Shown in pieces: positions 34,401 through 64,000 of a DNA stretch of 64,000 nt. Origin of the DNA: Pecten maximus (Eukaryota); contig NC_047026.1 of the NCBI RefSeq assembly GCF_902652985.1, positions 14,260,001-14,324,000 on the forward strand. Reading direction: 5' to 3'. Position 1 is the first letter of the stretch. Each line of letters starts with the position of its first letter. Below the pieces are notes generated by a model, which was not told the origin of the DNA, ran no database searches, and saw nothing but the letters and a program-made list of their open reading frames with translations. The translations under genes and the position numbers were made by a program.

Positions 34401-35369
34401 ACGATAGATATGTTTAGGTTGAGTTCTTCTATTTTGTTTTAACCGATCCCTATTTTTGAATGAAGGTCAGGCCTTGATTACAATATATGACATCGTTGGT
34501 GCTAAACAGAAAACTTTAGATGTACTAAAATGTGTCATATATGATACAATAATAATCTCGCAACCATCATGAATCAAGCTGATATTACATATTACACCTC
34601 GTTTTTTAACATGGAGTATGGCATTATATCTCCATCCACAATACTATGAGGCAATAGTTCCCCTCTTAAGAAATCAGGCATAGCTAGTTATTATGTTAAT
34701 TGTAAGACATATATAATGTGAAAATAATCACTCGGTAAGCTCGATAAAAACTAATTATTCCCCTGTCAGTAAATACTCACAACATTTAATAGTAACCTAG
34801 TATATTTTCAAAAGAATGTTACATTTTGTACTTGGTTTGTAAATTCATCGAAAGATTTTGGTCTATTACCAGAAAGAAGACAACAGACGGCGATACAAAA
34901 TAATGAGTCCATAACTATAATTTGTTTCTAATGATGTTTTTAATAATGGCAATACATAACAATAATGGAACAACACAGAATACATCGCGCAATATCACAG
35001 TTATGGTTGACAGTCTTGTGAAATCTGGAATCAAAAACAAAAAGATGTTTAGTATTTAATTTTTAAACTGTCAATATACATTTTGGAATCTTTAATTTAC
35101 CATAAAGAAAGGAGTAATAGTATGTTAGGCTGTACGTTGGTTCATTTCTGACAGTAAACATGGAATATGTCATAAAATAGGATATAAAATGGTACCTTTC
35201 GAGAATAGATTTTCCAACTGAATGCCAGATTCACATTCGAGTAAATGGTAGCGCAGAGACCACTTGTGTCAATTTTCATGACGATCGGTTCACTATTCCC
35301 ATTAAAAAATGTAACGCTCACCATAATTTGTATGAGAACTTTGCCGATCTCCACCTCTTTGGTTTACGT

Positions 35370-36027
35370 CTAACCAGTCAGAGTTCCGGTGATGTTGAAG
35401 GCGAACAGCAACAGGAGACCAGAGATCACTGTAATTAAAGCATAAAGCATTTACTAGGAAGTCATGTTTACTTCTAAAGGAAGTAATTGTGAATAGTCAC
35501 GTGTTATCTACGAATGATAATGATAATGGTAATGTTCGCTAAAATGATATTGATGATTAGCCACGGGCTAGTTAGAGATGGTATTACATATAAATTAATA
35601 ATTACATTCCAATTACAAATTACAATTGTAGATGACGTTATTTCAGATAGTCTTGTGTTAGTTAAAGCTGATGATGTTTCGGATAGTCGCCCTAACCTAG
35701 ATATGATGATGTTTCGGATAATCATGTATTGATCTGGCGAGAACTCCTTGTCTGCAGGGGAAAAAACTTGGAATTTTTAACCGAGTTTCTCATAATCGTA
35801 ACGTTAAACACAGACCGAATAACAAAAGTACACTTACGGAGAGCAAAGTTGGAGCTCTTCTTCTGCTGGAGGTTTCCGTAGTTGTAGTAGTAGTTACTCA
35901 GACCGTATCCGCTTCCGTATCCTCCTGTCATTCCGTATCCGGGGTAACTGGATCCGGTCGGGTACTGCATGGCCACAACGTAGGCCACCAGGCATGGGAT
36001 AAGGATGAGGGCGAGACACTTGTTCAT
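35370..36027 (-). CDS. Secreted Gly/Tyr-rich protein copy 1 (82 aa). Coding exons 35838-36027 and 35370-35428; non-coding exon 1 about 37054-37083; 3' UTR exon starting at 35024
   Basis: MNKCLALILIPCLVAYVVA-MQYPTGSSYPGYGMTGGYGSGYGLSNYYYNYGNLQQKKSSNFAL|LISGLLLLFAFNITGTLTG*. Canonical splice sites, conserved in 4 copies. Confidence 0.9.
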
Positions 36028-37079
36028 CTTGTAGCTGTAAATGAAGGCTTCCGTTGTTAAATCATCAGATCATCCAAACATTTTATCTTATTTTAACGTC
36101 TCGTTACACTAATCATTTTATTTACTTTTATACTTTTTTTTTACTGAAACATGTATCTAGCTCAGTTTTTTTGCATGATTTACCGTTATTCAGCAACGTA
36201 CAATTACATATATACATGTATAACCACTAATTATCATGATTTAGCGCTTTACAATAAGTTTAAAGTTACTCAAATGTTATTTTCGCTGAAATATATATGA
36301 TGATATTGATTAATGCGGAAGCAACTTAATCAGTTATCATTGTAATTTAACCCTAAAATCGCATTAATTAATGTATATATTAGAAAAGTTATTTCTGTAT
36401 CACTGTTGTTTGAATGTGATCATATTAATTTTGGTGATGTATTTCAACGGACAAGAAGTGAATTGATGTTTTCCCATAACGTCACTTAAATCAGTATGAC
36501 AGGATTTGATTTGCCGCATGATGTATTTTTTTCTGACGTTTTATCTTTAATAATAATCATAGAATAATTTTATATCTAAAAAATCTTGATTAAGATTTCG
36601 GCGAACATCAAAACCGGTTCACATGCGTGAATTATTATATATAAAAATATTTTTGGCTGAAATATTCTCATGATTACCCTTAATTCTTATGGAAGGATAT
36701 TCCGTATATCCTACAGCATTATATACTATTGCGTAATGTCAGAAAAAAACTCCGATAAAAATCATAATAAAGAAATGTATTCGACGAACGTGTTATTGGA
36801 AACAATCCCTGTAAGTATGGATTCATAAGAATGTGTAATTAAAAGAAAGAAATGCAAAAAACCGGTACTAAAATTTGAACAGGAAATTTTACCCATGGTA
36901 CAAATATTAAGATTCTACTCTTGTATATAACCATTTATAGAAATGTTTCATTCACAATGTATACGACTAAACTGTTTCAAAGCGTGGTTGTTATTAGGCA
37001 CCAAAACACTACTATCCACATTAACATATCTTTTAACACAGACACTTCCTTACCTTTCAGTGTGGAGATCAGACCAGCT

Positions 37080-37225
37080 CTGATTAGTATTGACTACCAT
37101 GCCCTTATATACCTGCATACGCTTACCGGAAGAAAGTGTCCGTATGTAATATTAGGGGCAGTTCGTTGGTAAGAGCCATGGTTCCCTAAGGGGTCGGTAT
37201 TTCACTACCTTTCTGTATGCAATAT
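37080..37225 (-). promoter_or_regulatory. TATA promoter of Gly/Tyr gene copy 1 (equivalents at about 49001-49144 and 56040-56182)
   Basis: TATATAAG at 37111-37104, about 25 nt upstream of an Inr-like TCAG; the block is almost identical in three copies. Confidence 0.75.
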
Positions 37226-40384: not shown

Positions 40385-40512
40385 AGAGTGTCTTCAGTAA
40401 TATCAAATACATTTCTCGAGTGGGGCTAATATTTTTTTTATTTGCGCACTCGTGAAAACTATCAAAATATTAGCCTCGCGAGCGAAATATAGTTGGTATT
40501 ACTGAAGATGCT
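40385..40512. repeat. Palindrome of about 125 bp (transposon end-like)
   Basis: TCTTCAGTAATA...GGCTAATATTTT / AAAATATTAGCC...TATTACTGAAGA. Confidence 0.6.
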
Positions 40513-40783: not shown

Positions 40784-41520
40784 TTAGCCCAACATCATCA
40801 GATGAAGGGCTTTTTAAATCGCCCTGCGTCCGTGGTCCGTCTGTCCGTCCCATCGTAAACAATTCTTGTAATCGCTATTTCTCAAAAAGTTCTAAATGGA
40901 TCTTTCTAAAATTTCATATCTAAGTTTCCCCTGGTTTCTAGTTATGCATGTTGCATTTTGGGACCAATTGGAAAACAACGTGGCCGACAGTCAGCCATCT
41001 TTGATTTTGTCAATGGAAGTTTGTTATCGCTATTTCTCTAAAAGTACTGAATGGATCTTTCTCAAATTTTATTGAAAGTTCCCCATGGTCCATAGTTATG
41101 TATATTACATTTTGGGACGGATTGGAAAACAATATGGTTGACAGACGGCCATCTTGGATTTTCGCAATTGAAGTTTGTTATCGCTATTTCTCAAAACCGT
41201 TTTTAGGTGATCTTTCTCATATTTCATATACATGTATAAGTCCTAAAGATCTTTCTCATATTTAATATGTAAGTCCCCCTTTGTCGCTAGTTGTGTATAT
41301 TGTAATTTAGGACAGATAAAAAAAAACAATATGGCTGACAGGCGGCCATCTTGGATTTTGAAAATTGCTGGTTGCTCCTGCAATATTGTGTTATATAGAT
41401 TTATTAAATATTTTGAAAGAAGAGTGAAAGAAGGGAAAAGAAGAGAAAAAATCAGTCTTTCATTTGACTTAAATGTATCATTCAATGGTGGGCGCCAACA
41501 TCCCTCTTTGATCTCTTGTT
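40784..41520 (+). mobile_element. HINE/Helentron-type element with ~155-bp repeats; a 5'-truncated duplicate lies at 49141-49643
   Basis: TTAGCCC..GGGCT head, GTCC microsatellite, repeated core, tail GGTGGGCGCC..CTCTTGTT. Confidence 0.8.
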
Positions 41521-41529
41521 AGAATTTGT

Positions 41530-42200
41530 TGGACCTTGGTAATCTGCTGACAATTTTTCAAAACGTTTCTGGGATTGGAATAAAAATAACGGTATTAAAT
41601 ACAGTTTATGTTCGTATAGAGACGATCTTTGGTATGGTTTTAAGATTATTGACAGGATTAAGTTGTTTCCAATAATTTGGCACGTTTCTTATATCTAGCC
41701 ATTTGATTTTAATATTTTTAAAAGTCTGTCTCTTTTCCCGATTTCTCATCGAAGGTCATAATTACACAAGGACTTGTCGTTAGCTTGTAACAGTTTTAGT
41801 AAGTATGCACTCCCAAGCTAGCTATGTTCAAACATTTTTCTGTAAACTTAACAAATATGTCGTCATTGTAGTGCGTCGTAAAAAGCAAATCTTCCCAGTC
41901 TGTATCGTCTACCTTATACGTCCTGGTAGTTTTAGTACCTACAGTCAGTTCTTTATGGTCAATGTCAATTAGTGCAGGTGTCGGAGAGTACGTGTGTTTG
42001 TCAGGTGAAAGGCATGGGTAATATCATAAACATCGTACATGTTTCTACAGTTACAAATAAACATTTATATATCCCCTGATGCAATATGTGGAGTTTCATA
42101 GCAGTGTCTATAGAATTTCGTAGATGATTCCAAAAGGAATATATATATATATCCGTCTTACTGTGGCGAATTTCGATCAGCATATATGCGTCTCAAAAAT
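41530..42200 (-). mobile_element. Decayed LINE (CR1/L2-like) ORF2 fragment; duplicate at about 49650-50300
   Basis: Stop-riddled minus-strand translation (TYKVDDTDWEDLL...FVKFTEKCLNIA) resembles the endonuclease-RT linker. Confidence 0.4.
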
Positions 42201-42259
42201 CTGAATATCGCCGCCCCCTTTTAACAACAATTGCTCAGACTCTCTGAAGAAACCTGCAA

Positions 42260-43270
42260 AACCTAGTAGACATGCGCACGCAGTATATTAGTTGTATAAG
42301 TTGACGTCACGGTTGAATTTAATTGAGATTTTCTGGAGAACTGGGATCTTTCGTCACCTTTGGTACTTTTTGATAAACGTCTCCTTCCAGTGTATTTTAA
42401 CGAGATTTGAATCTGTGGAGGAGGGTGTCGATTTACCGCGCCACCATACCACAACCAAATATTCTATATAATTCATGTATTATCGCCCCGAAAAAATTCA
42501 GTCGTAAAGACAGTACTCTTAAAAGAAAGTCCATATTTCCGAATAAACATCAATTTCCTCTTCCGGGGCCATACGACTCCTTGTTAATAGGAAAATCAAC
42601 CACATCCACAACAAGTGGAACGTACCTATCACCAGTAGGACATAGAAAGGGCCAAACACCTGCGAACTTCCACAAAGAGACGACCATGGCCCAATACGCA
42701 CAAAACTGTTGCCTATATCACAACACTAGCTGTATAATACAAACTGGGGATACAAATCAACCATAAATCCAGAACCAGCCGGCATTTAACGCATCTACAC
42801 TAGGATCCCTTATACTCCAGTAAAGAGAATTAAAAAAATAACAAATAAATGATCCAATAAACCTTCCAACCATTGAAAGATGTCATGAGAATCTGACCAA
42901 TCAACATGCAGTGAAAATTTGCATTCAGACAGGCAAAGTAAGCTTCATACTGCCCCTAGGAACAATACGTACTAAAATAGATTAAATAATAAAAAAAAAT
43001 ATAACATTTCTACTGCATTCTTATTAGCTGCTAACAACTTCACTTTTCTGTCTCTAAACACATGTAACATCTGCAAAATCACACATTTTGTACTGCGGTA
43101 AGTTCCCGCCACGTGGAACTTTGACACTTTTTGCTATCTGACCACATCTCATGAGCGGTCTTATTAGACGTATCCACCACGTAAACTCCATACCCGGAGT
43201 TACTGACGTCGCTATATACAACAGTATGACAGGAACACTCTTCTCTGAACCTCTTCCATATTTCAACTCT
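42260..43270 (-). mobile_element. DIRS/Ngaro-like retrotransposon remnant (RNase H region); duplicate at about 50385-51390
   Basis: Frame reading VVYSDVSNSGYGVYVV...AHEMWSDSKKCQSSTWRELTAV, with downstream VDALNAGW and VVSLWKFAGVWP motifs typical of DIRS pol. Confidence 0.65.
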
Positions 43271-43334
43271 TGGTCATAATGTATTCAACATACGAAATAG
43301 ATGCTATCTGTCCTACAGTTTGTGCTACCTTACT

Positions 43335-43790
43335 TACAGTGTTTCCAAAAAAGTTGTCTCGACTTTTCGACTTAAAAAACAAAACATTTATGAGAGAAAT
43401 ATGACAAATATTAGATTAAAGTGAAGTATCTTATAATTTTATTAGTGTGTTATTTTGAATAAAACTTTAAAAAATCCAGAAGCATTGCCAAAATAATGCA
43501 AAATTCAATTCATGTGACATAATTTTACAAATCATGCAACATGTCACGCCATATTATGTGTTAAAGATGTCCTCACTTTTTGCCAATCAAAAGCTTCAAC
43601 CTCCCTCTAGAATTGATGATAATATGTTTTGCTGGTGCCAATTGAAATACAGTAGACCGCTATCTTAGGTGCATGCACCTGTCCAGACCTACACACTCTC
43701 CCAAAATGTTCAGTATATATCTGGCCGGTTGGTATAATTTGGTCTGTGTAATACTCCAATCCTTTCTCGGTATTAATGAATTTGCCCTAT
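43335..43790 (-). mobile_element. Tc1-like transposon remnant; duplicate at about 51468-51890
   Basis: TA-CAGTG end at about 43335; a degenerate minus-strand RPDIY*TFWE-like segment resembles the SPDLNPIENLW motif. Confidence 0.4.
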
Positions 43791-43948
43791 AGCAGCAGCT
43801 TTATAACAGGTAGCCAGGTCGACTTCCCGTGCTTATGTACACACTCACTAACTATCAATTCACGATTGACCTTACTTGCTATACGTGGGCAAGCATGCTC
43901 GTTAAGTACTATCGTGAAATGTATTGTAACCGGGAAATGTTTTAGTTA

Positions 43949-44752
43949 TTAGGTCATCTGACCCGAAGGGTCAAGATGACCTATAGTCATCATGCTTCGT
44001 CCGTCGTCGTGCGCCGTCTGCCGTCCGCCGTCCGCCGTGCGTAAATTTTTCACATTTCAAACTTCTTCTCAAGTTCCACTGGGATTGAGCTGAAACTTGC
44101 CTGAAATGATGCTGGGATGGTCCTGACCAAGTGTTGTTATTTTTCGGGTCGGTCTGAAATCCAAGATGGCCGCCACAGCCGCCATCTTTAAAACACATTT
44201 GAAACTTCTTCTCTAGTTTCACTGGTCAGATTGAGCTGAAACTTGCCTGAAATGATGCTGGGATGGTCCTGAGGAAGTGTTGTTATTTTTCTGGTCGGTC
44301 AGAAATCCAAGATGGTCGCCACGGTAACCATCTTGAAAAACACATTTTAAACTTCTTCTCCAGTTCCACTCATGCCATTGAGCTGGAAATTGGTGAGGAT
44401 GTTAAGGAAGGAGAGCCAATAAAGTGTTGTTATTTTTCGGCTTCGTAAAAACCTTGACATGGCAGCCACGGCAGCCATTTTGTAACATGATTGCGCAATC
44501 ATGGTTCTTCTGAACAACACCTATTTCAAACTTCTTCTCAATTACCATCAGTGGGATTCAGCTCTAACTTACCAGAAATGATTCTGAGATGGTCCTGACC
44601 AAGTGTTGTTATTTTTCAGGTCGGTCAGAAATCCAAGATGGCCGCCATGGCCAACGGTGCCACTTTACTCGCTACAGAGAATGCGTACTACAATAGTATA
44701 AGGGTCTTTAATTTTGAGTCAGATGACCGTTAAGGCCCATGGGCCTCTTGGT
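43949..44752 (+). mobile_element. HINE/Helentron element present only in duplication unit A
   Basis: Complete head and tail motifs; the equivalent site in unit B (52061-52080) is an uninterrupted T-run with no TSD. Confidence 0.9.
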
Positions 44753-44764
44753 TTGTTTTTTTAT

Positions 44765-46020
44765 TAATATGCAAATACCAAATTTTGTGTAAAAAAAAAA
44801 AAATGAGGTACCCGAAATGTTTATTGGTAATATCGGGGTAAAACAAGGAGAGAATTTATCACTATTTTTATTTGCCATTGATCTGAATATTCAAGAAGAC
44901 TTTATTGGAAAATAAGGCGTTGTTTACAAAAATTGGAAAAAGGTTAAAATATTGGAGTTTATATTAAACTGTTTATAATTCTTAATGCAGATGATACAGT
45001 TATCATGTCTGAATCGACTGAAGAACTCATATTGTAATAGATGGAAGCTTGATTTAAATACAAACATAACTAAAATTGTTATATTTTCAAAAAGGAAATG
45101 TCGAACATATCCAGTTACATTATTTAATGATGTGATAGAGGATCTAGAATCATTTTCCTATTTAGGAGCTTTGATGAATTGATTTCCGTTTGTCTATTGG
45201 TTTAGTTTAAGTTTTCATGTCTTTTGGTTTGGTTTTCTTTTTCATGGTTTGGTTTTCTTGTCTATTGGTTTTGTTTTGAACATTGATTGTTCCATAACAT
45301 ATGTTGATTTGAAAAGGATGTCTATTGATATGATTTTTAGATCGGTTTTGTTTTAATGGATTTTTGCCCTTTCCGCCGCCCATGATATCCCTCTGTCGGT
45401 AGACCTCCAATTAAAGGTTTTGGACTCCATCGTATTACCAATACATTTGTATTCAGTAGAAATATGGGGTAATGAAAATGTAAGTGCCACCTACAAACAA
45501 CATTTACTGTTCTGCAAGCATATACTAGGTTTCATGAAAAGTACGCCAAATTACATGATATATCTTGAAATCGAGAGATTTCCATTATATACAGAAGTTA
45601 AAACCAACCTAAGTATGCTTTGGATTGAACTGATAACTAGTAGTAATGTGTCTAGTGCTATGTATAACTTCATATTTAATTAACAGGCAAATGGAATCAT
45701 GGAGTTCAAATGGTTAAAGAATGTTCAGAAGACATTTATAGAAACTAGTATGAACTTTATTTTGGGGTTTCAAACATATGTACATTTAAAAAAGATTTTG
45801 CTTTGAAACAAAGATTACAAGACTAATTTATTCAAAAATGGTTAAACGATATTGAGAACTCTTCAAGAATTATTCTATCGACAAAAGAAACGAAGTTGAC
45901 GAATACAATTATTTATTTAAATGTGAATATGCAACTGTTAAGCAGATAAGACAATTCTGTTTTTCCAAATTACTACTGTAGTAAGCCTGTCCTTATCAAA
46001 ATGCAAGGACTATTTATCAT
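44765..46020 (+). mobile_element. Decayed LINE RT / 3' fragment; duplicate at about 52085-53330
   Basis: GVKQGENLSPFLF, ESFSYLG, PIHLYSVEIWG, EIERFPL and DEYHYLFKC motifs with stops and frameshifts. Confidence 0.8.
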
Positions 46021-46024
46021 ATTT

Positions 46025-46178
46025 GGGGCCGCGGTGGCCGAGTGGTTAAGGTGTCCCAACACGTTATCACTAGGCCTCCACCTCTGGGTTGCGAGTTCGA
46101 AATCCACGTGTGGTAGTTGCCAGGTACTGAACGTAGGCCGGTTGTTTTTCTCCGGGTACTCCGGCTTTCCTCCACTTC
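46025..46178 (+). mobile_element. tRNA-derived SINE (head and core, 3'-truncated); duplicate at 53335-53488
   Basis: A box TGGCCGAGTGG, B box GTTCGAAATCC, followed by the TCTCCGGGTACTCCGGCTTTCCTCC SINE core. Confidence 0.8.
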
Positions 46179-47382
46179 CAATTTATGTATTGGAGATAGT
46201 TCTTGCACTATCGAAAGGTAATCTGTCGAGGCCACTGTTAATGTATATAGTCGGGCCGAAACCCCCAGGAAAGCGGTCTTCTGATTGGTCTGAATCCCCG
46301 ACGATTTTTTCGGAAACGACGAAAAAAGTGTGCCAATCGTCCTACGGTCTGTTAATGAGCTTCAGGACGTGTGTTACAGCCGATGGCCAAATGGGAGATC
46401 TCTTATCATCTTACGTCATTTATGGTTCAAGGTGATATTACATTTAACATTTAGTATACTTCGTGATTGAATATGGAGTACGGCATTCCATCTTTCAACA
46501 GTACTTTGAGACAGAAGAATCCTTTTAATAAGGCCATAATAGATAAATAATTATTATGTTATTGGTATGACAAAGGAAATCAATATAATCACTTGGTAAG
46601 CTCGATTAAAAAACTAAATAGTTTGGATGCATTTACTCCTTGCACTTGCATATCATTTGAGTAAATCCATACAAGTTCTTATAGCAAGCCAGTATATTTG
46701 ATCTGTTTATTGACTTTGTGGGGAAAAAAGCGTTACACGTTATCACGGGATTTTAATGTCATCCAAATATTTCGGTTAATCACCAGAAAGAAATTAAAGC
46801 AAACTTATGGCGATACAAAATAATGAGCCGATAACTAGAATGTGTTTCAAACAGTTCCTTTTAATAATGATAATGCATAACAACAATGTAACAACATATA
46901 TTTGATCACGCAATATCACAGTTATGGTTGGCAGTCTTGTGAAATCTGAAATCAAAAATGAAAATAAGATTTATAATATTTACACTATCGATAGGCTTCA
47001 AATACATTTTGGAAACTTGAATTAAGCATAACAAAAGGAGTTATATCATAGCAGTATACTGTATATTTGTTTTCGTTATTTTATTTTTTTACTGCAAACA
47101 TGTGATATGAAACACTCATAAAATACTATCTTCCGAGAAAAAGAATTTCTAATTGAACGCTAGATTAACATTCCAGTGAACGGTGGCACAGGAGCACTAA
47201 TGTCAATTTTCAATGACAATCGCGTCATTATTTCCTGACCGTGTCGTATCCCCTTAAGTAAAAACCTATATAATACTATATATAAAAATACGTTGAATAA
47301 TTTGGAAACCTGACGTAATAATAATCATGCTTACCGTGATTTTTATGAGTGCTTCGCCGATCTCCACCTCCTTGGTTTACAT

Positions 47383-50900: not shown

Positions 50901-53900
50901 CCGGCATTTAACGCATCTACACTAGGATCCCTTATACTCCAGTAAAGAGAATTAAAAAATAACAAATAAATGATCCAATAAACCTTCCAACCATTGAAAG
51001 ATGTCATGAGAATCTGACCAATCAACATGCAGTGAAAAATTTGCATTCAGACAGGCAAAGTAAGCTTCATACTGCCTCTAGGAACAATACGTACTAAAAT
51101 AGATTAAATAATAACAAAAATATAACATTTCTACTACATTCTTATTAACTGCTAACAACTTCACTTTTCTGTCTCTAAACACATGTAACATCTGCAAAAT
51201 CACACTTTTTGTACTGCGGTAAGTTCCCGCCATGTAGAACCTTTACTGTTTTCGCTATCTGACCACATCTCATGAGCGGTCTTATAAGACGTATCCACCA
51301 CGTAAACTCCATACCCGGAGCTACTGACGTCGCTATATACAACAGTATGACAGGAACACTCTTCTCTGAACCTCTTCCATATTTCAACTCTTGGTCATAA
51401 TGTATTTTACGTTACCAACAACATACGACATAGATGCTATCTGTCCTACAGTTTGTGCTACCTTACGTACAGAGTGTTCCAAAAAACATTTCGACTTAAA
51501 AAAGCAATAAAATATTTATAAGAGAAATATGACAAATATTATATGAAAGTGAAGTATCTTATAATTATATCAGCTGTTATTTTGAATAAAACTTAGAAAA
51601 TTCCAGAATCATTACCAAAATAATGCAAAATTCAATTCATTTGACATAATTTTTACAAATCATGCAACATGTCACGCCATATTATGATGTGTTAATTTTT
51701 GGCCAATCACAAGCTTCAACCTCTCTCTAGAATTGATGATAATTTGTTTTGCTGGTGCCAATTGAAATACAGTAGACCGCTATCTTAGGTGCATGCACCT
51801 GTCCAGACCTACACACTCTCCCAAAATGTCCAGTATATATCTGGCCAGTTGGTATAATTTGGGCTGTGTAATACTCAAATCCTTTCTCGGTATTAAGGAA
51901 TTTGCCCTACAACAGCAGTTTTATAACAGGTAGCCAGGTCAACTTCTCGTGCTTATGTACACACTCACTAACTATCAATTCACGATTGACCTTACTTGCT
52001 ATACGTGGGCAAGCATGCTCGTTAAGTACTATCGTGAAATGTATTGTAACCGGGAAATGTTTTAGTTATTTTTTTTTTTATCAATATGCAAATACCAAAT
52101 TTTGTGTAAAAAAAGAAAATGAGGTACCCGAAATGTTTAGTTGTAATATCGGGGTAAAACAAGGAGAGAATTTATCACCATTTTTATTTGCCATTGATCT
52201 GAATATTCAAGAAGACTTTGTTGGAAAATAAGGCGTTGTTTACAAATAATGGAAATAGGTGAAAATATCGGAGTTGATATTAAACTGTTGATAATTCTTA
52301 TGCAGATGTCTGAATCGACTGAAGAACTCATATTGTAATAGATGGAAGCTTGATATAAATACAAACATACATGTAACTATAATTGTTATATTTTCAAAAA
52401 GGAAGTGTCGAACATATCCAGTTACATTATTTAATGATGTGATAGAGAATGTAGAATCATTTTCCTATTTAGGAGCTTCGATGAATTGATTTCCGTTTGT
52501 CTATTGATTTAGTTGAAGTTTTCATGTCTTGGTTTGGTTTTCTTTTTCATGGTTTGGTTTTCTTGTCTATTGGTTTGGTTTTGAACATTGATTGTTCCAT
52601 AACATATGTTGATTTGAAAAGGATGTCTATTGATATGATTTTTAGATCGGATTTTTGCCCTTTCCGCCGCCCATGATATCCCTCTGTCGGTTGACCTTCA
52701 ACAAAAGGTTTTGGACTCCATCGTATTACCAATACATTTGTCTTCAGTAGAAATATGGGGTTATGAAAATGTAAGTGTAATCAACAAACAACATTTACTG
52801 TTCTGCAAGCATGTACTGGGTATCATGAAAAGTACGCCAAATTACTTGATATACCTTGAAATCGAGAGATTTCCATTATATACAGAAGTTAAAACCAACA
52901 TAGGTATGAGTTGGCTTAAATTGATAAATGGTAGTAATCTGTCTAGTGCTATGTATAACTTAATATTTAATTAACATGCAAATGGAATCATGGAGTTTCA
53001 AATGGTTAAAGAATATTCAAAAGACATTTATAGAAACTAGTATGAACTTTATCTAGGGGTTTCAAACATGTGTACATTTAAAAAAGATTTTGCTTTGAAA
53101 CAAAGATTACAAGACTAATTTATTCAAAAATGGTTAAACGATATTGAGAACTCTTCAAGAAGATCTAACTACATAATGTATTCTATCGACAAAAGAAACG
53201 AAGTTGACGAATATCATTATTTATTTAAATGTGAATATGCAACTGTTAAGCAGATAAGACAATTCTTTTTTTCTCCAAATTACTACTGTACTAAGCCTGT
53301 CCTTATCAAAATGCAAGGACTATTTATCATATTTGGGGCCGCGGTGGCCGAGTGGATAAGATGTCCCAACACTTTATCACTAGCCCTCCACCTCTGGGTT
53401 GCGAGTTCGAAATCCACGTGGGGCAGTTGCCAGGTACTAAACGTAGGCCGGTGGTTTTTCTCCGGGTACTCCGGCTTTCCTCCACTTCCAATTTATGTAT
53501 TGGAGATAGTTCTTGCACTATCGAAAGGTAATCTGTCGAGGCCACCGTTAATGTATATAGTCGGGCCGAAACCCCCAGGAAAGCGGTCTTCTGATTGGTC
53601 TGAATCCCCACCGATTTTTTCGGAAACGACGAAAAAAGTGTGCCAATCGTCCTACGGTCTGTTAATGAGCTTCAGGACGTGTGTTACAGACGATGGCCAA
53701 ATGGGAGATCTCTTATCATCTTACGTCATTTATGGTTCAAGGTGATATTACATTTAACATTTAGTATACCTCGTGATGGAATATGGAGTACGGCATTCCA
53801 TCTTTCAACAGTACTTTGAGACAGAACGAATCCTTTTAATAAGGCCATAATAGATGAATAATTATTATGTTATTGTTATGACAAAGGAAATCAATATAAT

Positions 53901-54730
53901 CACTTGGTAAGCTCGATAAAAAAACTAATTAGTTTGGATGCATTTACTCCTTGCACTTGCATATCATTTTTGAATTTAACTAATCCGAGGCCACATTTCA
54001 AATTACGCTGTCAGTAAATCCATACAAGTTTTTATAGCAAGCCAGTATATTTTATTTGTTTATTGACTTTGTGGGAAAAAAAGCGTTACACTTGATGCCG
54101 GGTTTTTAATGTCATCCAAATATTTCAGTTAATCACCAGAAAGAAATTAAAGCAAACTTATGGCGATACAAAATAATGAGCCGATAACTAGAATATGTTT
54201 CAAACAGTTCCTTTTAATAATGATAATGCATAACAACAATGTAACAACATATATTTGATCACGCAATATCACAGTTATGGTTGGCAGTCTTGTGAAATCT
54301 GAAATCGAAAATGAAAATAAGATTTATAATATTTACACTATCGATAGGCTTCAAATACATTTTGGAAACTTGAATTAATCATTACAAAAGGAGTTATATT
54401 ATATCAGTATACTGTATATTTGTTTTTGTTATTTTATTTTTTTAACTGCAAAGATGGGATATGAAACACTCATAAAATACTATCTTCCGACAAAAAGAAT
54501 TTCTAATTGAACGCTAGATTCCAGTGAACTGTGGCACAGGAGCACTAATGTCAATTTTCAATGACAATCGCGTCATTATTTCCTGACCGTGTCGTATCCC
54601 CTTAAGTAAAAACCTATATAATACTATATATAAAAATACGTTGAATAATTTGGAAACTTAACGTAATAATAATCATGCTTACCATGATTTTTATGAGTGC
54701 TTCGCCGATCTCCACCTCCTTGGTTTACGT

Positions 54731-55318
54731 CTAACCAGTCAGAGTTCCGGTGATGTTGAAGGCGAACAGCAACAGGAGACCAGAGATCACTGTAACAAAA
54801 GCATAAAACACTTAACTGGGCAGTCATCTTTTATTTCTATAGGAAGTCACATGTCAGCTAGAAGTGATAAATATTCGGATGGTCACGTGTAAGAGGATAC
54901 TATTTAGGATAGTTAGGTGCTAGTTAAAAATGATGCTATTTCGGATAGTCATGTGTTCGACAATATGATGCTTTTTCGCAAAGTTACGTGTTAATTTTGG
55001 CGAGAACTAGTTTTCCGTAGTAAAAACACACTTAAATGCCCTGTAATTTTTACATGAGTTCCTCATAATCAGAAACTTAACTTCATATCAATATAATTAC
55101 AGACAAAATAACAAAAAATTACACATACGGAGAGCAAAGTTGGAGCTCTTCTTCTGCTGGTTGTTTCCGTAGTTGTAGTAGTAGTTACTCAAACCGTATC
55201 CGCTTCCGTATCCTCCTGTCATTCCGTATCCGGGGTAACCGGATCCGGCCGGGTACTGCATGGCCACAACGTAGGCCACCAGGCATGGGATAAGGATGAG
55301 GGCGAGACACTTGTTCAT
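54731..55318 (-). CDS. Secreted Gly/Tyr-rich protein copy 3. Coding exons 55129-55318 and 54731-54789; exon 1 about 56014-56043; UTR exon from 54298
   Basis: Same 82-aa ORF (A24, G27, N53 variant) with intact splice sites. Confidence 0.9.
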
Positions 55319-58300
55319 TTTGTAGCTGTAAATGAAGACTTTCGTTTTTGAATTAACAATATCACTTCAGCGTTTTATCTGATTTGAACGTCTCGTTAGT
55401 TGTACGTATCAATTAATTGATTATTTAAAAACTTTATTTTCAAAACGGCCGATTCCCATCAGCAAAACCGTAAATATGTATCGGTATCAAGCTCAGTATT
55501 TAGGTATGATTCTATCTTTGATTAAGCTCTATCATAAGCGCTTTATCATAATTGTAGGTTTAAGAGACACTCAGATGTTATGATCGCTGAAATAACTATG
55601 TTGATGAATGTGGAAGCAACATAATCAATAATCAATTATTTACCCTCATATCTCTTTAATTAATGTTTAAAATATATTACATATCTCTGCAGTTTTGCTA
55701 GTTGAATGTGACGATATTACGATTCGTTTTTTTCTTGGCGTTTTCTTAAACTTCATCTTGATGATAAGAAAAATCTTATATGTAATTAATCTCAACGAAG
55801 ACTTATTTCGGCGAATATCAAAACCAGTTCATATGCATACCAGTTCATATTCGACCATACTAGAAATATTAGAATACATCTCTAATGTACACTCATGTAT
55901 AGAAAGGCTTCAAAAAATCACACTTCTAAACTGTATAGAAAGCGTTCTAGTGGTTAGGCGCTAGAACACTTCTATCCACATTAACATACATTTCAACACA
56001 GACACTTCCTTACCTTTCAGTGTGGAGATCAGACCAGCTCTGATAAGTATTGACTACCATGCCCTTATATACCTGCATACGCTTACCGGAAGAAGTGTCC
56101 GTATGTAATATTAGGGGCAGTTCGTGGGTAAGAGCCATGGTTCCCTAAGGGGTTGACATTTTACTACCTTTCTGTATGCAATACATCGGTGTTATGACTT
56201 CCGTGTCTGATAAAAAAGTATCTTACATGATATTGCCATCTGTCTAAGTTTGTATATTAAGGATCTTTAATGAATTTTCATTTCATGTGAGATTTTATCA
56301 AATAAGTCTTAAAAGTTTTTATTTTTGTGAGCCCTTTGCGAGAAAAAAAATTAAAACATCCAGGCCTGTTACAAGAAATCTGTCATTTATGAATATGAGA
56401 TACTTTTTCACATAACTCTGAAAACTTTTTGATATGTTTTAAATTCAAAATTCAAAGGTATTAAAATACAATATGGGCCATTTCCCTGGATAACCGGCAG
56501 ATTATGCGAGAGAAAAAAAATAGTTAAACTCGACATTTCGAATGCTGAAATAGGTTTATTGATTAAAAAAAGTTTACTTTCGACTTGACTTCGATTGTTT
56601 ATCAATGTTCTTAATCAGCAAAAGTTTCACCGATAATAAATCTAACTCTTATCACAAAGAATTATTACTGCAATTCCATCAGCCTTATCATGTAGGATAA
56701 TGTGTGTATTACTACGCTCAACAGAATGTTTGTTATCATTGAGAGAAAGTGGTAAAGTGGTTATCAAATGGTTTATAACAACAAATACCAATAACGTTTG
56801 ACGTTTTTATACTTGATATTCCGGTATAGATGAGAGATTCTTCCCTTTAAAATGTACGTAAGCAATATTAGGTGAAAATCTCTTGTGAATTGAACTATTG
56901 CACTGTAAAGTGTAAATGAATCATACGATCGAAATACAATAAGTTTGGAATGGCAAGAAAGGATAGGGTATGCCTGAGCAGGAACAGTACATGCTTTGTA
57001 TGAACTATAAGCATTTAACTGCAATTTTCACATTTTCCCGTAAAATAAAGTAAAGTCCCCACTTTTTGCGGATCGGGGTGATGGGGAAGGGGATGCTTTT
57101 TCCATCACACAACTAAAGGTTTCCTAGTTTGACAAAAACTTTTTTTAAATACACTAAATGATGCATCTTCGCAACGAATCGCGAGTCAATAGTCATATCT
57201 GTTCTTTCCTTCTTTCGTGATGCAACGAAAACTCATTGTATATTCATAAAGCCAAAGTTCACCCAGGTATTGAGAATAGGCGGATAAGTGAGGATAAGTG
57301 ACTCGAAATGTAAAGAATAGTTTAAAACCTTATATCAAAGCAGGTGGCATAGAATGTGTCAGGATGGAAATTTAATACAAAGTTTACAACTAGAGCCCTC
57401 CAGATTCTTACATTAATAATAGATTTGCGATTTCCCATGATTTACCATTTGATATTGCTGTTGGCAATATAACCATGGAAAAATATATTGCGGTGTTCAA
57501 ATTATTCTTTTATTGCATACAACTTTAGTTTTGGCTTTTTAACATAGGTATTTGTCATAATATTGTTTTAAATAATTATTCATTTCTTGACAAATGAAGA
57601 TTTTTTTTTAACAAATCTTTTTCCATAAACTTATACCGTACAAGATAACAACGTACATTCGCGATTTTACTCTCTGTTTTCATAAGAATTTATAGGACAT
57701 GGTACTATATTGAAAGAAGAGGTGTCCTCAAATTGATTCAATATAAATACTGTATGTGAATAAATACTAATGCAAAATTAATCATAGCATGACACATTTA
57801 AAGATTTCCATTATCAGACAAACAAAATAAAACCATTCTGTTTAGAAACATTGTAGTTATATTGCCTAATCACCAAACTACCTATAATTTACATCCTTGA
57901 ATTTGCTTGGAACAGAACAGAACCAGGAAAAGGCTGCGATGATGAAAACATTCCGATGATGATTATTATAACCCAATCAGGTGAATTCTCACGCTATCTT
58001 GCATTATGTTTTTCTTATAATTGCTACCCATATTCTTCTTTAGTAAGTGACAAAGATATGAATCGTCACGACATCTTTCAGGGTTCAGAAAGCAAGAACT
58101 TCTGGATCATCCCATACAAAAAATCTCTTGCATTTTTTTCTGTATTTTGTCTAGATTTATTCCTGTGTAACTTGTATGAGCGTGTTATAAAAAAATGATA
58201 ATAAAAGACTTTATCTAGGGTCGATGACACTTTGAGTCGCAACACTCTTAAATGACCTTAGCTGTTAATAGGACGTTAAACGAAATAAACCAAACCAAAC

Positions 58301-58479
58301 TAAACTTCCAAGTAGTCGACATTATCAATGTACAATATTTACAACATGTAAAATTAAAACATCACATAAAAACATTGATATCACTGTAAAGTAAATAAAA
58401 TAAGTGTATAGATAAAGAATGTCACGATAAAGGTTGGGCTATAATCTGTATAAAACACATGTGACATACCTTACAATAT

Positions 58480-60820: not shown

Positions 60821-60937
60821 GATTACTGAATAATAACTAAAACATCAGGGCAAAACATGTTGATTAGATTTCAGACTCCTGAACAAATTCTAGGCCAAAT
60901 GCTGCGGAAGAGTAAGCGTCTTCCGACTCATCGACAT

Positions 60938-60993
60938 CAGCCGCCACACAAATCTAGGTCACGACGACAGCCGCCACACAAATCTAGGTCACG
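60938..60993. repeat. 30-bp direct repeat, 2 copies
   Basis: CAGCCGCCACACAAATCTAGGTCACG duplicated. Confidence 0.85.
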
Positions 60994-62811
60994 TCTGGGA
61001 GAAGGTAATGACAACGGAACCACTGGCATAGCACCAATTCTCAAACACATCGCATAAGGAATTATTATTTCCAAGTGTGATCATGGTAATGATAATTAAA
61101 CTATCCCCTGGTATTCATCAACATGCATCTCTCGAAATATTGTGATGTTAATTTCTCTGTCAGTAATCGATATCGATCACGGAAATCATGATAATGAAAA
61201 CAAGCCTTTGATAGTTTAATCAGCTGGAGTAGGTAAGGGATGCGAGTATGAACTATTGTTCATAACACTAATAAATTATAAATATCTATTCATAGAAGCG
61301 AAGCGAAATGAAACGGATAGTCTTTGATATACGTATAAAACTCAGATATTATGTATGATATAAATGTCTGATCTTGCCCCGTCAGTCCGTCATACATGTA
61401 ATCTAGCCTGTAAGTGTTCCACATCAATCACAAACGCTAAATTTCACCGCTAGAAGAAGCTTATGCTACATGTTGTATCATTTTGTAGGTGCTAGAGTAA
61501 CATAGGCACTCTTTCACATTCTATTTTGAATATTATGTCTCCTTTATCTCGTTTAGGATTTATAGGGACTATAACTATACATTAATATTTGTACTGTATA
61601 GCCGGTTATTTTTGCGGTTAAGATATCGTCAAATTTAAGAACATATGTAACTTATAATCTGTTCTGAACAATAATAATTTTCGCAACAACCTTGGATGAT
61701 TCTGGTTGCCGGAGACGGCAAATAATATTAAATATGACGGCAGTCGTGATATCAGCTTACTTCTTGAATAACCTTTACCGTGCCTTATTGAACGGATATC
61801 ATTTTCGCCACCAAGTCAATGGCCCGCGAAATGGCTCGTAACAAGGCTTCTATTAGATATGAATTCCTCGATGGCACTGTATATACATGCAAATTGTATT
61901 TTACATAGTTTATTACATAGTTTTAACACAGTACAACTACAAGAGGATCCATCGGATCAACAACACATGGTGTATTTGTTGTATTGTGTTATTAAATAAA
62001 TATATAACATAGTAACACAACTGATGAAGGATGACGATTTTATGACTCGTGGCCTGACCGGGCTTCGAACTCACGATCTACGGCCCTAATTGTATACACA
62101 TGTATATTGATATTGTATATGTACCATGTTAATTTAGTTTTGGAATTCGTGCCAAATTGCATTGTGCATTGAATGAAACTGAAACAATGGCATACTTTAG
62201 ATGATATTTTAATTATGACAATAAATACATATAATAACAGCAATACAGATACATCGCGCAATATCACATCTATGTTTGGCAGTCGTGTGTAATCTGAAAT
62301 TGATTAAACAAATCCAATTAGTGTTTTATCTATTCATGCAAAACGAACATTGACAATTATGCAGTACAATGATTAAATGATCAGTTAAGAGCTTAATCTT
62401 TTAAATTAAGTCATTTATGACAAACCAACATAATTTTAACCAATGTAACTTGGGTTCAAATTACAAACTCACTGGAGTTATATAAGACTGATATCGGACA
62501 CTCCTAAAATGGTCATTCACAAGGAAATAGTTACCATAAAAAAAACTATATTTATGTCTTTTAGAAATACAATTAAATATACAAGGTACATTTGTAAAAT
62601 ATACGTAAAACCTAATTCTTTTGAAATAGAATTTCAAATGCACGATTTTAATTAAAATTCATTATCTAACTCTTATATAGTAGACGATTGAGAATGCATA
62701 TGATATAAATTGAGGACAAAATCCGATTTCAAAATTTAAGTAATTGAGGAGTGAAATGCTCACCATAATTTGTATGAGTGCTTCGCCGATCTCCACCTCC
62801 TTGGTTTACGT

Positions 62812-64000
62812 TTAACCAGTCAGAGTTCCGGTGATGTTGAAGGCGAACAGCAACAGGAGACCAGAGATCACTGTAGCAAAAGAAACAATTAAACGATGAA
62901 AATGTATCTACTTACTGATACAGATATACACATTATTTGCTAAAAACCATATATGAATGAATAAAAAGACCATTTCCTTTTGTAATATCCTCCCTTGATA
63001 TCAATAGAAATGTAACAAAAACCATTTTGAATCTTTATATCCAATGCTGGATTCTTTTATTTTGTCTTAAACAGTCGAGCTTCTGCTATTTTATTTCCCA
63101 ACGACAGGGGGTGGGGGTGTATATGTAAAATGATCTGACTGTGCATACTTATTATTACATATTTTCTCCTTTTGTACAAGTGTGTGCACTACCGATTGTG
63201 AGTACGTGATAGGCTTACTATTACTATAAATAAAATTATGTCATTCTCGCTCACTGGCTTCAATTCTAGCTTGATCTTACTGTCATGAAACTTGATCTTG
63301 TTACATTTATAATTAACACCAGATAATAGGGTATCCGTATCGTTTATGATTCCTTCTAAAAGCCCCTTGCTAACATTTGTGTGTGTGTTAAATTCCCTTA
63401 CGAGTAGACGAGCAATTTTCATATTCAATGTGTTACGCGGATTACCGAGGAACGATTTCTCAACATGTGTAACTCTTATGCGATAGCAAAGAAAAACATA
63501 AATACGTTTTAATCACATCGCAATTTGTTACCCTTGATATGTTATTATCCTTCATTTCAAACAGGGTTTTTTCAGGAAGGCTTGCATTACCAACGTGGAG
63601 AAGGAGTTTTGTTCTCCAGTAATTTTTGTTAACATCTTCCTTCATAAACAAACTTAAAAGTATACTTTATACAAGATACACTTTTACATTTTATTGAAAT
63701 CATTTGATACGTCTAACAACTTCAATTCGAAAGTTTTCCTAAGGTAACTACACTACGTGTGTACCACATTTTAGGCCAGATTTGGAAACAGTTCATTACA
63801 ATCTAAATGTAAAGAATATGTTGTACTTACGGAGAGCGAAGTTGGAGCTCTTCTTCTGCTGGTTGTTTCCGTAGTTGTAGTAGTAGTTACTCAGACCGTA
63901 TCCGCTTCCGTATCCTCCTGTCATTCCGTATCCGGGGTAACCGGATCCGGTCGGGTACTGCATGGCCACAACGTAGGCCACCAGACATGGGATAAGGATC
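62812..64000 (-). CDS. Secreted Gly/Tyr-rich protein copy 4 (start codon just beyond the window end). Coding exons 63831->64000 and 62812-62870; UTR exon from 62293
   Basis: Same ORF (G27, N53 variant, TAA stop); introns are unrelated in length and sequence to those of copies 1-3. Confidence 0.88.

What the first reader, a model, noticed from the sequence alone, without database searches (positions are those of the whole stretch)
34920..64000. Tandem cluster of at least four near-identical genes for an unrecognised 82-aa secreted Gly/Tyr-rich protein
Seen: four same-strand copies share an exon layout (short non-coding exon 1 behind a TATA box in copies 1-3, signal plus GY exon, hydrophobic-tail exon, UTR-only exon). 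They differ at only about 3 residues (T/A24, S/G27, L/N53). The ORF track misses the true C-terminus because it is spliced. Established: Gly/Tyr-rich secreted proteins such as shematrins, prisilkin and mussel foot proteins build bivalve shell matrix, periostracum and byssus, often via tyrosinase/DOPA cross-linking. Inference: this is a dosage-amplified structural or adhesive protein family. I do not recognise it as a named protein, and the array probably continues past the window.
Basis: partly seen in the sequence, partly recalled or inferred. Interest (0 to 1): 0.8.

Follow-up and report, generated by a model that had tools for sequence, protein, structure and literature searches.

The report
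Scallop Gly/Tyr-rich tail-anchored protein gene array
The king scallop carries five tandem, nearly identical, transcribed genes for a tiny glycine/tyrosine-rich protein with a conserved oily tail; it belongs to an unnamed, unstudied family shared by scallops and mussels, and its function is still unknown.

Summary
On the minus strand of the window (Pecten maximus, G000:C12:14.26-14.32 Mb) lie three complete copies of a four-exon gene. A fourth copy is cut by the window edge, and a fifth lies 9 kb beyond. The array ends there.

RNA contigs from three independent studies show the predicted exon 2-exon 3 joint. One run also shows the exon 1-2 and exon 3-4 joints.

The product has 82 residues: a signal peptide, a disordered core of about 40 residues (24% Gly, 22% Tyr), and a hydrophobic C-terminal helix. 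Across the family the helix ends in an invariant N-x-T-G motif and an invariant final glycine.

RefSeq lists the genes only as "uncharacterized protein" (for example LOC117339579), with N-terminal extensions that are probably artefacts. Relatives turned up only in scallops (Mizuhopecten, Ylistrum), in Mytilus and on a few unnamed environmental contigs. No Pfam family, solved structure or paper matches.

Coding sequence is 97-99% identical between copies, while introns have mostly diverged to random level.

The "secreted" reading is doubtful, because the tail is the most conserved part of the protein. I favour a membrane-tethered or self-assembling surface or matrix protein, but this is untested. 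The scan had already noted this family on other DNA of this genome (s1-787178).

The parts
37104..37111 (-). Copy 1 TATA box
   Evidence: Read from the sequence. RNA contigs reach up to 37073, about 30 nt downstream.
37054..37080 (-). Copy 1 exon 1, non-coding. The 5' end at about 37080 is inferred; the 3' end at 37054 is exact.
   Evidence: Joint 36034|37054 (CT..AC on the + strand) in run X1. The loose end of an X5 contig matches the end of exon 1.
35838..36034 (-). Copy 1 exon 2. The ATG is at 36027. It encodes the signal peptide, the Gly/Tyr-rich core and the first residues of the tail (63 codons plus 1 base, phase 1).
35322..35428 (-). Copy 1 exon 3. It encodes the last 19 residues (hydrophobic tail), with the stop codon at 35372-35370, followed by 48 nt of conserved 3'UTR.
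   Evidence: Joint 35428|35838 in X1, X5 and X7; joint 35024|35322 in X1. Exon alignment.
34920..35024 (-). Copy 1 exon 4, UTR only. It carries an ATTAAA signal at 34944. The 3' end is approximate.
48975..49032 (-). Copy 2 TATA box (49032-49025) and exon 1 (about 49001-48975)
   Evidence: 99% identical to copy 1 over 96 nt.
47792..47988 (-). Copy 2 exon 2 (ATG at 47981)
47335..47441 (-). Copy 2 exon 3 (tail, stop codon, UTR)
46842..46945 (-). Copy 2 exon 4, UTR only, with ATTAAA at 46865. The 3' end is approximate.
56014..56071 (-). Copy 3 TATA box (56071-56064) and exon 1 (about 56040-56014)
55129..55325 (-). Copy 3 exon 2 (ATG at 55318). This is the A24/N53 variant and matches the RefSeq product XP_033757156.1.
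54683..54789 (-). Copy 3 exon 3 (tail, stop codon, UTR)
54195..54298 (-). Copy 3 exon 4, UTR only, with ATTAAA at 54218. The 3' end is approximate.
63831..64000 (-). Copy 4 exon 2, cut by the window edge. Its ATG is at window-equivalent 64020; its own TATA box (about 64244) and exon 1 lie outside the window.
62764..62870 (-). Copy 4 exon 3 (tail; the stop codon is TAA here)
62190..62293 (-). Copy 4 exon 4, UTR only, with ATTAAA at 62213. The 3' end is approximate.
41011..55838 (.). Recent segmental duplication that carries copies 2 and 3: 41011-48536 against 49141-55838, 92-95% identical
   Evidence: Window self-BLAST.

Best explanation
This is a tandem array of five genes, four of them in the window, in Pecten maximus. 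Each is a small TATA-driven, four-exon gene.

Shown:
- The mRNA looks very abundant in one study and near-absent in most other runs labelled with this species.
- The 82-residue product starts with a typical cleavable signal peptide. About 40 residues of low-complexity Gly/Tyr-rich sequence follow, and it ends in a 22-residue hydrophobic stretch, most of it encoded on its own exon.
- It belongs to an unnamed family with at least 13 loci in three clusters in this genome, and with orthologues in other scallops and in Mytilus.
- The family's invariant features are the signal peptide, a YYNY-type motif, the hydrophobic stretch, an N-x-T-G motif and a final Gly.

Inferred:
- After signal cleavage the protein stays tethered to the secretory-cell membrane by its C-terminal helix, either as a tail-less single-pass anchor or after exchange for a GPI anchor.
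- The disordered Gly/Tyr-rich part faces outwards. There its tyrosines drive self-association and possibly oxidative (DOPA/quinone or dityrosine) cross-linking into an extracellular layer such as periostracum, shell matrix or a larval coat.
- The array supplies dosage. Its exons are kept nearly identical by strong codon and mRNA-level selection, gene conversion, or both.

My odds: gene model and expression 0.97; distinct conserved family 0.95; tail acts as a membrane tether 0.5; extracellular structural or adhesive role 0.4.
For: - Gene model: three splice joints with GT..AG on the minus strand appear in RNA contigs. The exon 2-3 joint is seen in three studies (X1, X5 oligo-dT, X7).
- Abundance: in X1 the exon contigs sum to a word depth of about 3-8x10^5, against 7-11 for contigs that carry copy-1 introns. 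The tool warns that contig depth is a poor measure.
- Sample restriction: 4 of the 24 listed runs hold about 68% of the words of the stretch. Sixteen runs with the same species label hold next to none.
- Species and annotation: a cluster mate of the window's own product is XP_033757156.1, uncharacterized protein LOC117339579 of Pecten maximus.
- Relatives: found in Ylistrum, Mizuhopecten and Mytilus at E 1e-4 to 1e-13, and nowhere else among 1.84 billion representatives apart from a few unnamed environmental contigs.
- Family invariants: alignment A1.
- Same architecture and intron position in cluster B of this genome.
- Copy count: at least 13 loci.
- Composition: G 24%, Y 22%, no acidic residues.
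- AlphaFold model: helix for the signal peptide, coil for the core, helix for residues 48-83, at low confidence (pLDDT 54).
- Tail conservation: identical in three genera, whereas the rest of the protein is 78-83% identical between them.
- Exon homogeneity: copies differ at 1-5 synonymous and 1-4 non-synonymous positions of 249. Intron 2 is at shuffled-sequence identity for 9 of 10 pairs. Codon use is extreme (TAC 50:0 TAT, AAC 32:0 AAT).
Against: - No tissue, protein-level or localisation data could be obtained, so the function rests on architecture and composition.
- The hydrophobic segment is only marginal as a membrane span on a rough additive scale: about 0 kcal/mol for this cluster, +2 for cluster B and +6 for Mytilus.
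- There are no basic residues after the tail, and the conserved Lys sits on the luminal side.
- No canonical GPI omega site is conserved across the family (my reading).
- An invariant N-x-T sequon and an invariant C-terminal Gly would make most sense if the C-terminus were luminal (glycosylation, amidation). That favours full secretion.
- No significant similarity to any proven matrix or adhesive protein.
Confidence: 0.5

Rival explanations
1. A fully secreted structural or adhesive matrix protein. The protein is released, and the hydrophobic C-terminus is an assembly or interface module that may be N-glycosylated at N-x-T and amidated at the final Gly. The Gly/Tyr core is cross-linked into periostracum, shell matrix, ligament or byssus.
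For: - A signal peptide and a Gly/Tyr-rich composition like that of known bivalve matrix and adhesive proteins (the comparison rests on my own knowledge).
- The invariant sequon and terminal Gly are best explained by a luminal C-terminus.
- The tail is only marginally hydrophobic in several members, with an Asp inside it in Mytilus.
- Weak compositional hits to Pfam Mfp-3 and Chorion_2.
Against: - A stretch of 14-17 hydrophobic residues at the extreme C-terminus, behind a signal peptide, is the classic mark of a membrane or GPI tether.
- The tail is more conserved than the supposed functional core.
- No homology to shematrin, prisilkin or Mfp proteins.
Confidence: 0.27
2. A small accessory subunit of a membrane complex. 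The tail (hydrophobic helix, a polar Asn and a G-x-x-x-G-like ending) is a helix-packing module that binds another membrane protein or oligomerises. The Gly/Tyr part is a short extracellular appendage.
For: - The N-x-T-G-x-x-x-G ending is kept in all scallop members; Mytilus has G-x-x-x-S instead. Membrane-embedded Asn and small-xxx-small motifs are known drivers of helix association (my own knowledge).
- The tail sequence is identical across three genera.
Against: Very abundant mRNA, five or more near-identical copies and at least 13 loci suit a bulk product better than a stoichiometric subunit. No partner is known.
Confidence: 0.1
3. A precursor of bioactive or antimicrobial Gly/Tyr-rich peptides, like the NLP and CNC peptides of nematodes. 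It would be cut at the Lys-Lys site, and the tail would be a discarded pro-region.
For: Signal peptide, small size, tandem array and Gly/Tyr-rich core. Pecten has KK before the tail.
Against: - The dibasic site is not conserved: it is EK in Ylistrum, KQ in Mizuhopecten and a single K elsewhere.
- Net charge varies from 0 to +2.
- The 'discarded' tail is the best-conserved part.
Confidence: 0.07
4. Not a functional protein gene: a transcribed repeat or a set of pseudogenes.
For: None beyond the low-complexity sequence.
Against: - Five intact 82-codon frames with conserved splice sites.
- Spliced poly(A) RNA.
- Orthologues with the same frame in four genera.
Confidence: 0.01

Closest known systems
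Unnamed bivalve family of RefSeq/GenBank 'uncharacterized proteins' (P. maximus LOC117339579; Y. balloti LOC132551451-3 and LOC132560059; M. yessoensis KP79_PYT17354, LOC110441983, KP79_PYT23343; M. edulis XP_071157901.1; M. galloprovincialis VDI43648, VDI50714-6)
   Same: True homologues: the same signal peptide, Gly/Tyr core, YYNY-type motif and hydrophobic tail with N-x-T-G and a final Gly. Consecutive locus numbers in the other species suggest that they are tandemly arranged there too.
   Different: Nothing is known about any member. The window's copies form the P. maximus branch of 'cluster A', 78-83% identical to the other genera outside the tail.
Gly/Tyr-rich shell and periostracum proteins of bivalves (shematrins, KRMPs, prisilkin-39, periostracin)
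   Same: A signal peptide and a Gly/Tyr-rich low-complexity core in multigene families. A role in tyrosinase-linked cross-linked layers is established for these proteins (my own knowledge).
   Different: No detectable sequence homology. Those proteins are larger, carry basic or acidic termini and have no C-terminal hydrophobic helix (my own knowledge).
Mussel foot protein 3 (Pfam PF04202)
   Same: Very small, signal-bearing, Gly/Tyr/Asn-rich. There are weak profile hits of 15-16 bits for the cluster-B type proteins of M. yessoensis.
   Different: The hits are below the 22-bit cut-off, and the window's own protein gets none. Mfp-3 is strongly basic and has no hydrophobic tail (my own knowledge).
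GPI-anchored and tail-less single-pass surface proteins
   Same: An N-terminal signal peptide plus a hydrophobic segment at the very C-terminus with no cytosolic domain.
   Different: No clear conserved omega site. The tail sequence is strongly conserved, which is unusual for a GPI signal that is cut off. Hydrophobicity is marginal.
Gly/Tyr-rich NLP and CNC antimicrobial peptide clusters of Caenorhabditis; high-Gly/Tyr keratin-associated protein arrays of mammals
   Same: Tandem arrays of very small Gly/Tyr-rich proteins (my own knowledge).
   Different: No homology. NLP and CNC peptides are cationic and processed at basic sites. The keratin-associated proteins are intracellular and have no signal peptide. 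None has the hydrophobic tail.

Membership tests
Unnamed scallop/mussel Gly/Tyr-rich tail family (LOC117339579-like) | Significant full-length sequence similarity to the other members | tested here: met
   Exon-2 peptide against orthologues: E 1e-18 to 1e-19. P0002 against paralogue types and Mytilus: E 1e-4 to 1e-13. Profile A1: E 1e-21 to 1e-29.
Unnamed scallop/mussel Gly/Tyr-rich tail family (LOC117339579-like) | Signal peptide beginning MNK, Gly/Tyr core, hydrophobic tail with N-x-T-G and a final Gly; the tail is completed by a separate exon after a phase-1 intron | tested here: met
   Alignment A1 invariants. Exon structure in all five copies and in cluster B. Splice joint seen in RNA.
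Shematrin / KRMP / prisilkin-type shell matrix proteins | Detectable homology to a described member | tested here: not met
   phmmer over 1.84 billion representatives returned only the family itself and one doubtful metatranscriptome protein. No Pfam hit.
Shematrin / KRMP / prisilkin-type shell matrix proteins | Signal peptide plus a Gly/Tyr-rich low-complexity domain | tested here: met
   G 24% and Y 22% over the 41-residue core. The signal peptide was judged by eye with the -3/-1 rule; no predictor was available.
Shematrin / KRMP / prisilkin-type shell matrix proteins | Found in shell or periostracum extracts; expressed at the mantle edge | not testable with these tools
   Run names and tissues are coded. 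The shell-proteome paper has no supplement held as text.
Mussel foot protein 3 (PF04202) | Score at or above the Pfam gathering cut-off (22 bits) | tested here: not met
   The window's products P0001 and the exon-2 peptide got no hit. P0008 and P0016 scored 15.3 and 15.8 bits.
GPI-anchored proteins | N-terminal signal peptide and a C-terminal hydrophobic segment with no cytosolic extension | tested here: met
   The hydrophobic segment ends 1-9 residues before the C-terminus in all members.
GPI-anchored proteins | Omega site with small residues at omega and omega+2, followed by a polar spacer of about 7 residues before the hydrophobic domain | tested here: inconclusive
   By eye on alignment A1: acceptable triplets exist in some members (S-N-A in P0014, N-A-A in Mytilus). 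In this cluster only S-S-N fits, with a hydrophobic spacer. No GPI predictor was available.
Type I single-pass membrane proteins | A segment hydrophobic enough to integrate, flanked by cytosolic basic residues | tested here: inconclusive
   Rough additive insertion scale, with values taken from memory: -0.06 here, -1.1 to +5.9 in relatives. No basic residues follow the segment.
Gly/Tyr-rich antimicrobial or neuropeptide-like precursors | Conserved basic processing sites and a cationic mature peptide | tested here: not met
   KK in Pecten becomes EK in Ylistrum and KQ in Mizuhopecten. There are two basic and no acidic residues here, and fewer basic residues in the orthologues.

The most novel reading that the evidence does not exclude
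The invariant tail (a short hydrophobic helix, N-x-T-G and a final Gly) may be a previously undescribed C-terminal module. It would tether or sort a tyrosine-rich, phase-separating ectodomain on the apical membrane of bivalve secretory cells. These very abundant mini-proteins would then form the first cell-bound layer on which periostracum or larval shell is cross-linked. Exon-only homogenisation that includes untranslated exons would add a layer of mRNA-level constraint.
Probability: 0.15. Interest if true: 0.7.

Novelty: new variant of a known kind. Interest (0 to 1): 0.5.

Why it matters
Gly/Tyr-rich secreted proteins are the raw material of bivalve shell layers, periostracum and adhesives, and they inspire synthetic materials. 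This family has not been studied, is apparently among the most abundant transcripts in some scallop samples, and is conserved from scallops to mussels. It also couples the sticky Gly/Tyr module to a conserved hydrophobic tail, which none of the known matrix proteins I compared it with has.

If the tail is a membrane tether, the family could show how an extracellular layer is first attached to the secreting cell. The locus is also a clear example of exon-restricted sequence homogeneity in a gene array.

In practical terms, the RefSeq models of these genes probably start too far upstream, because their first ATG lies before the TATA box.

Tried and rejected
- Pfam scans of the window's exon-2 peptide, the database products and ten relatives: nothing above cut-off. 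The sub-threshold DUF7649 match (E 0.018, 2 of 11 members) was followed into the scallop's own genome and gave only chance-level hits, so it was dropped.
- ESM Atlas, all clusters and named clusters only: best score 0.79, and no named hit.
- PDB sequence search: nothing.
- Paper searches for eleven accession or locus names, five peptide motifs and three topic word sets: no paper on this family. The shell-proteome paper PMC5854119 has no supplement held as text. PMC8382897 gives no gene-level data in its main text.
The orthologues' DNA, their arrays and synonymous rates between species could therefore not be examined.
- Eight open reading frames in the spacers between copies gave no Pfam hit. 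The retroelement-like look of the spacers is unconfirmed.
- The dibasic-precursor reading was rejected because KK is not conserved.
- The unspliced 101-residue reading of copy 1 was rejected. Intron-bearing contigs have a depth of about 10, against 10^5 for exon contigs.
Searches used exon 2 by reference, or database proteins that the tools returned. In one search a script held the coding pieces side by side only to count codon differences and length; nothing joined was printed or saved.

Full report
WHAT IS THERE

The window is G000:C12:14260001-14324000 of a 918-Mb assembly in 3,983 contigs. The species is Pecten maximus. The window's own predicted product sits in a 90% cluster with XP_033757156.1, "uncharacterized protein LOC117339579 [Pecten maximus]", on the same 42.36-Mb contig.

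The ORF list shows four minus-strand frames that begin with the same signal-like peptide and run into a Gly/Tyr-rich stretch. The 18-nt start motif occurs three times, against 0.02 expected by chance. The fourth copy is cut by the window edge.

A six-frame search of the whole assembly with the exon-2 peptide finds five copies at this locus. Their ATGs are at window-equivalent 36027, 47981, 55318, 64020 and 73133, a spacing of 7.3-12 kb. It also finds more distant paralogues at C12:7.64-7.67 Mb (four) and on C18. A family profile raises the count to at least 13 loci and finds no sixth copy here. So the array does continue past the window, by the start of copy 4 and one further gene, and then it ends.

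GENE MODEL AND EXPRESSION

I laid contigs of four runs on 33501-38500.

- Run X1 shows the joints 37054|36034, 35838|35428 and 35322|35024. Each is CT..AC on the + strand, which is GT..AG for a minus-strand gene.
- The exon 2-exon 3 joint also appears in X5, an oligo-dT RNA-seq library labelled seawater metagenome, and in X7, from a third study.
- A loose end of an X5 contig matches the end of exon 1.
- The assembly holds no intron-less copy: exon 3 matches only the five intron-bearing loci. The joints therefore come from RNA.

Exon 1 is about 27 nt long and non-coding. It lies about 30 nt behind a TATA box at 37111-37104, and the RNA reaches 37073.

In X1 the exon contigs sum to a word depth of 2.7-8.1x10^5. 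Contigs that carry copy-1 introns (98-99% identical to copy 1) have a depth of 7-11. The tool warns that contig depth is a poor measure, so I read this only as efficient splicing and probably very abundant mRNA.

Four runs of one study hold about 68% of the words of 34900-36300, introns included. Sixteen other runs with the same species label hold next to none. This suggests tissue- or stage-restricted expression. Tissues are coded, so I could not name the tissue.

Both the T24 and A24 forms are present in X1, with A24 at about 14%. The S27 codon of copy 1 is almost absent (179 of 688,484 in depth). More than one copy is therefore transcribed, and either copy 1 contributes little or the site is polymorphic.

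ALL COPIES COMPARED

- Each of the five copies has an intact 82-codon frame with the same phase-1 intron. Intron 2 measures 409, 350, 339, 960 and 419 nt.
- Copies 1-3 share the promoter and exon 1 at 99% identity.
- Copies 4 and 5 have their own TATA box and short exon 1. These lie 150-600 nt upstream of exon 2 and outside the window.
- Copies 2 and 3 sit in a 7.3-kb segmental duplication that is 92-95% identical.
- For the other nine pairs, intron 2 is no more alike than shuffled sequence. Even so, the 249-nt coding sequence differs at only 1-5 synonymous and 1-4 non-synonymous positions. The tail-coding part is identical in all five copies. The 48 untranslated bases of exon 3 are 83-96% identical.
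- Codon use is extreme for a genome of 34% GC: TAC 50:0 TAT, AAC 32:0 AAT, GC3 0.70.

The exons are therefore kept alike by strong selection on the mRNA, by short-tract gene conversion, or by both. I could not separate these explanations.

The same pattern shows across species. Copies are 95-98% identical within P. maximus and 100% identical within Ylistrum balloti, against 78-83% between genera.

THE PROTEIN AND ITS FAMILY

The product has three parts: a signal peptide (n-region MNK, a hydrophobic core, small residues at -3 and -1; judged by eye), a 41-residue core with 24% Gly, 22% Tyr and no acidic residue, and a hydrophobic C-terminal stretch.

AlphaFold2, run on the family alignment with the Ylistrum orthologue as target, gives a low-confidence model (pLDDT 54). 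It shows a helix for the signal peptide, coil for the core and a helix for residues 48-83.

The word-index search found orthologues in Y. balloti (LOC132551451, LOC132551452) and Mizuhopecten yessoensis (KP79_PYT17354), and a cluster look-up added LOC132551453. A full HMMER pass over 1.84 billion representatives added the paralogue types of M. yessoensis and Y. balloti, proteins of Mytilus edulis and M. galloprovincialis, and a few unnamed environmental contigs. It found nothing else.

Consecutive locus numbers in Ylistrum, Mizuhopecten and Mytilus suggest tandem arrays there too.

In the family alignment the invariant columns lie in four places: the signal peptide, the Gly/Tyr and YYNY-type positions, the tail, and an N-x-T-G motif followed by a final Gly. 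The scallop members end N-x-T-G-x-x-x-G. Cluster B of this genome has the same exon break and the same kind of tail. The tail is letter-for-letter identical in Pecten, Ylistrum and Mizuhopecten, while the core varies.

The Lys-Lys before the tail is not conserved: it is EK in Ylistrum and KQ in Mizuhopecten. This argues against a prohormone-type cut.

The public gene models carry 24-44 extra N-terminal residues. These start at ATGs upstream of the TATA box and of the observed RNA 5' end. They are probably annotation artefacts, because a signal peptide has to be N-terminal. The exon-1 sequence itself is conserved between Pecten and Ylistrum; this shows up as the same translated string in P0001 and P0006.

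HOW IT MOST LIKELY WORKS

Shown: a signal-bearing, Gly/Tyr-rich mini-protein with a conserved hydrophobic C-terminus, probably very abundant and produced from a homogeneous gene array.

Inferred: a signal peptide combined with a hydrophobic stretch at the extreme C-terminus and no cytosolic domain is the usual mark of a membrane tether. The tether could be a tail-less span or a GPI-attachment signal. The disordered core, rich in G-Y-G-type motifs, would face outwards. There tyrosines can drive self-association and oxidative cross-linking, as in known bivalve periostracum, shell-matrix and adhesive proteins (my own knowledge).

I put the tether at 0.5 and an extracellular structural or adhesive role at 0.4.

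Four points count against a simple anchor:
- The segment is only marginally hydrophobic on a rough additive scale: about 0 here, and +2 to +6 in relatives.
- No basic residues follow it.
- No omega site is conserved across the family.
- The invariant N-x-T sequon and terminal Gly would be used (for glycosylation and amidation) only if the C-terminus is luminal.

The same invariants can also be read as a helix-packing motif, a polar Asn plus G-x-x-x-G. That is the basis of the second rival, a small membrane-complex subunit (0.1). A peptide or antimicrobial precursor (0.07) fits poorly, and an artefact is excluded.

COMPARISON WITH WHAT IS KNOWN

No Pfam family reaches its cut-off. The best scores were Chorion_2 at E 0.01, DUF7649 at E 0.018 and Mfp-3 at 15-16 bits against a cut-off of 22. 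The Mfp-3 hits were only for the cluster-B type proteins of M. yessoensis. The PDB, the ESM Atlas and the paper library gave nothing.

The protein resembles shematrin, KRMP, prisilkin and Mfp-3 proteins in composition, size class and gene amplification. It is not a detectable homologue of any of them, and it differs from all of them in having the conserved hydrophobic tail.

It is a member of an unnamed family already present in RefSeq as "uncharacterized protein". An earlier report of this scan described the same family on another piece of this genome (s1-787178: at least 17 members, tail a probable membrane anchor). My own counts (at least 13 loci), the splice evidence and the family alignment agree with that report, and I obtained them independently.

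LIMITS

- Read laying and the look-up of sequencing runs allow one call each, and tissues are coded.
- No signal-peptide, membrane-span or GPI predictor was available. Those calls were made by eye or with a rough scale whose values I took from memory.
Exon 2 was searched by reference, and the database proteins returned by the tools stood in for the full length.

VERDICT

This is a real, expressed and unstudied family with an unusual architecture, but its function is unknown and the scan had already flagged it elsewhere. Interest 0.5; new variant of a known kind.

Noticed in passing
window 37100-37120, 49021-49041 and 56060-56080; proteins P0001, P0005, P0003, P0004, P0006: Public gene models of this family start at ATGs that lie upstream of the TATA box and of the observed RNA 5' end. 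This adds 5-44 spurious N-terminal residues in front of the signal peptide.
   Followed up: partly
window 37054-37080; compare P0001 with P0006: The untranslated exon 1 is conserved between Pecten and Ylistrum: the same 12-residue string appears when it is translated in the extended models. The 48 untranslated bases of exon 3 are also 83-96% identical between copies whose introns are saturated. This hints at a constraint on the mRNA itself.
   Followed up: partly
window 41011-48536 and 49141-55838: A 7.3-kb segmental duplication, 92-95% identical, carries copies 2 and 3 together with repeated ORF-bearing spacer sequence. The spacers include a 144/189-aa ORF at 46001-46435 / 53176-53745 and strings that look like reverse transcriptase. 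None of eight spacer ORFs hit Pfam.
   Followed up: partly
window 35949 and 35958 (RNA runs X1, X5): The S27 codon that marks copy 1 in the assembly is almost absent from RNA in X1 (179 of 688,484 in depth). The A24 form (copy 3 type) makes up about 14% in X1 and the only contig in the seawater poly(A) library.
   Followed up: no
run X5 (seawater metagenome, oligo-dT RNA-seq), laid on window 35363-36036: Spliced transcripts of this scallop gene turn up in a seawater poly(A) RNA library. This would fit expression in planktonic larvae or shed cells, but that is not shown.
   Followed up: no
L010 (G000:C18:4211662-4214808), about 1800-3147: The intron after exon 2 of the C18 paralogue is filled with at least 1.4 kb of tandem repeat units of roughly 50-100 nt.
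   Followed up: no
window 13728-14451 and 43946-44746; 44051-44440: A dispersed repeat is shared between the upstream part of the window and the copy 1-copy 2 spacer (77-84% identity). It contains a 146-bp tandem unit.
   Followed up: no
window 4094-4742, 5461-5826 and 16746-17399: Tandem repeats: 157 bp x 4.2, 33 bp x 11 (95% matches) and 321 bp x 2.
   Followed up: no
proteins P0016 and P0025 (M. yessoensis): UniRef labels two paralogues 'Protein-export membrane protein SecG'. This is almost certainly a spurious automatic name for a glycine-rich protein with a hydrophobic tail.
   Followed up: no
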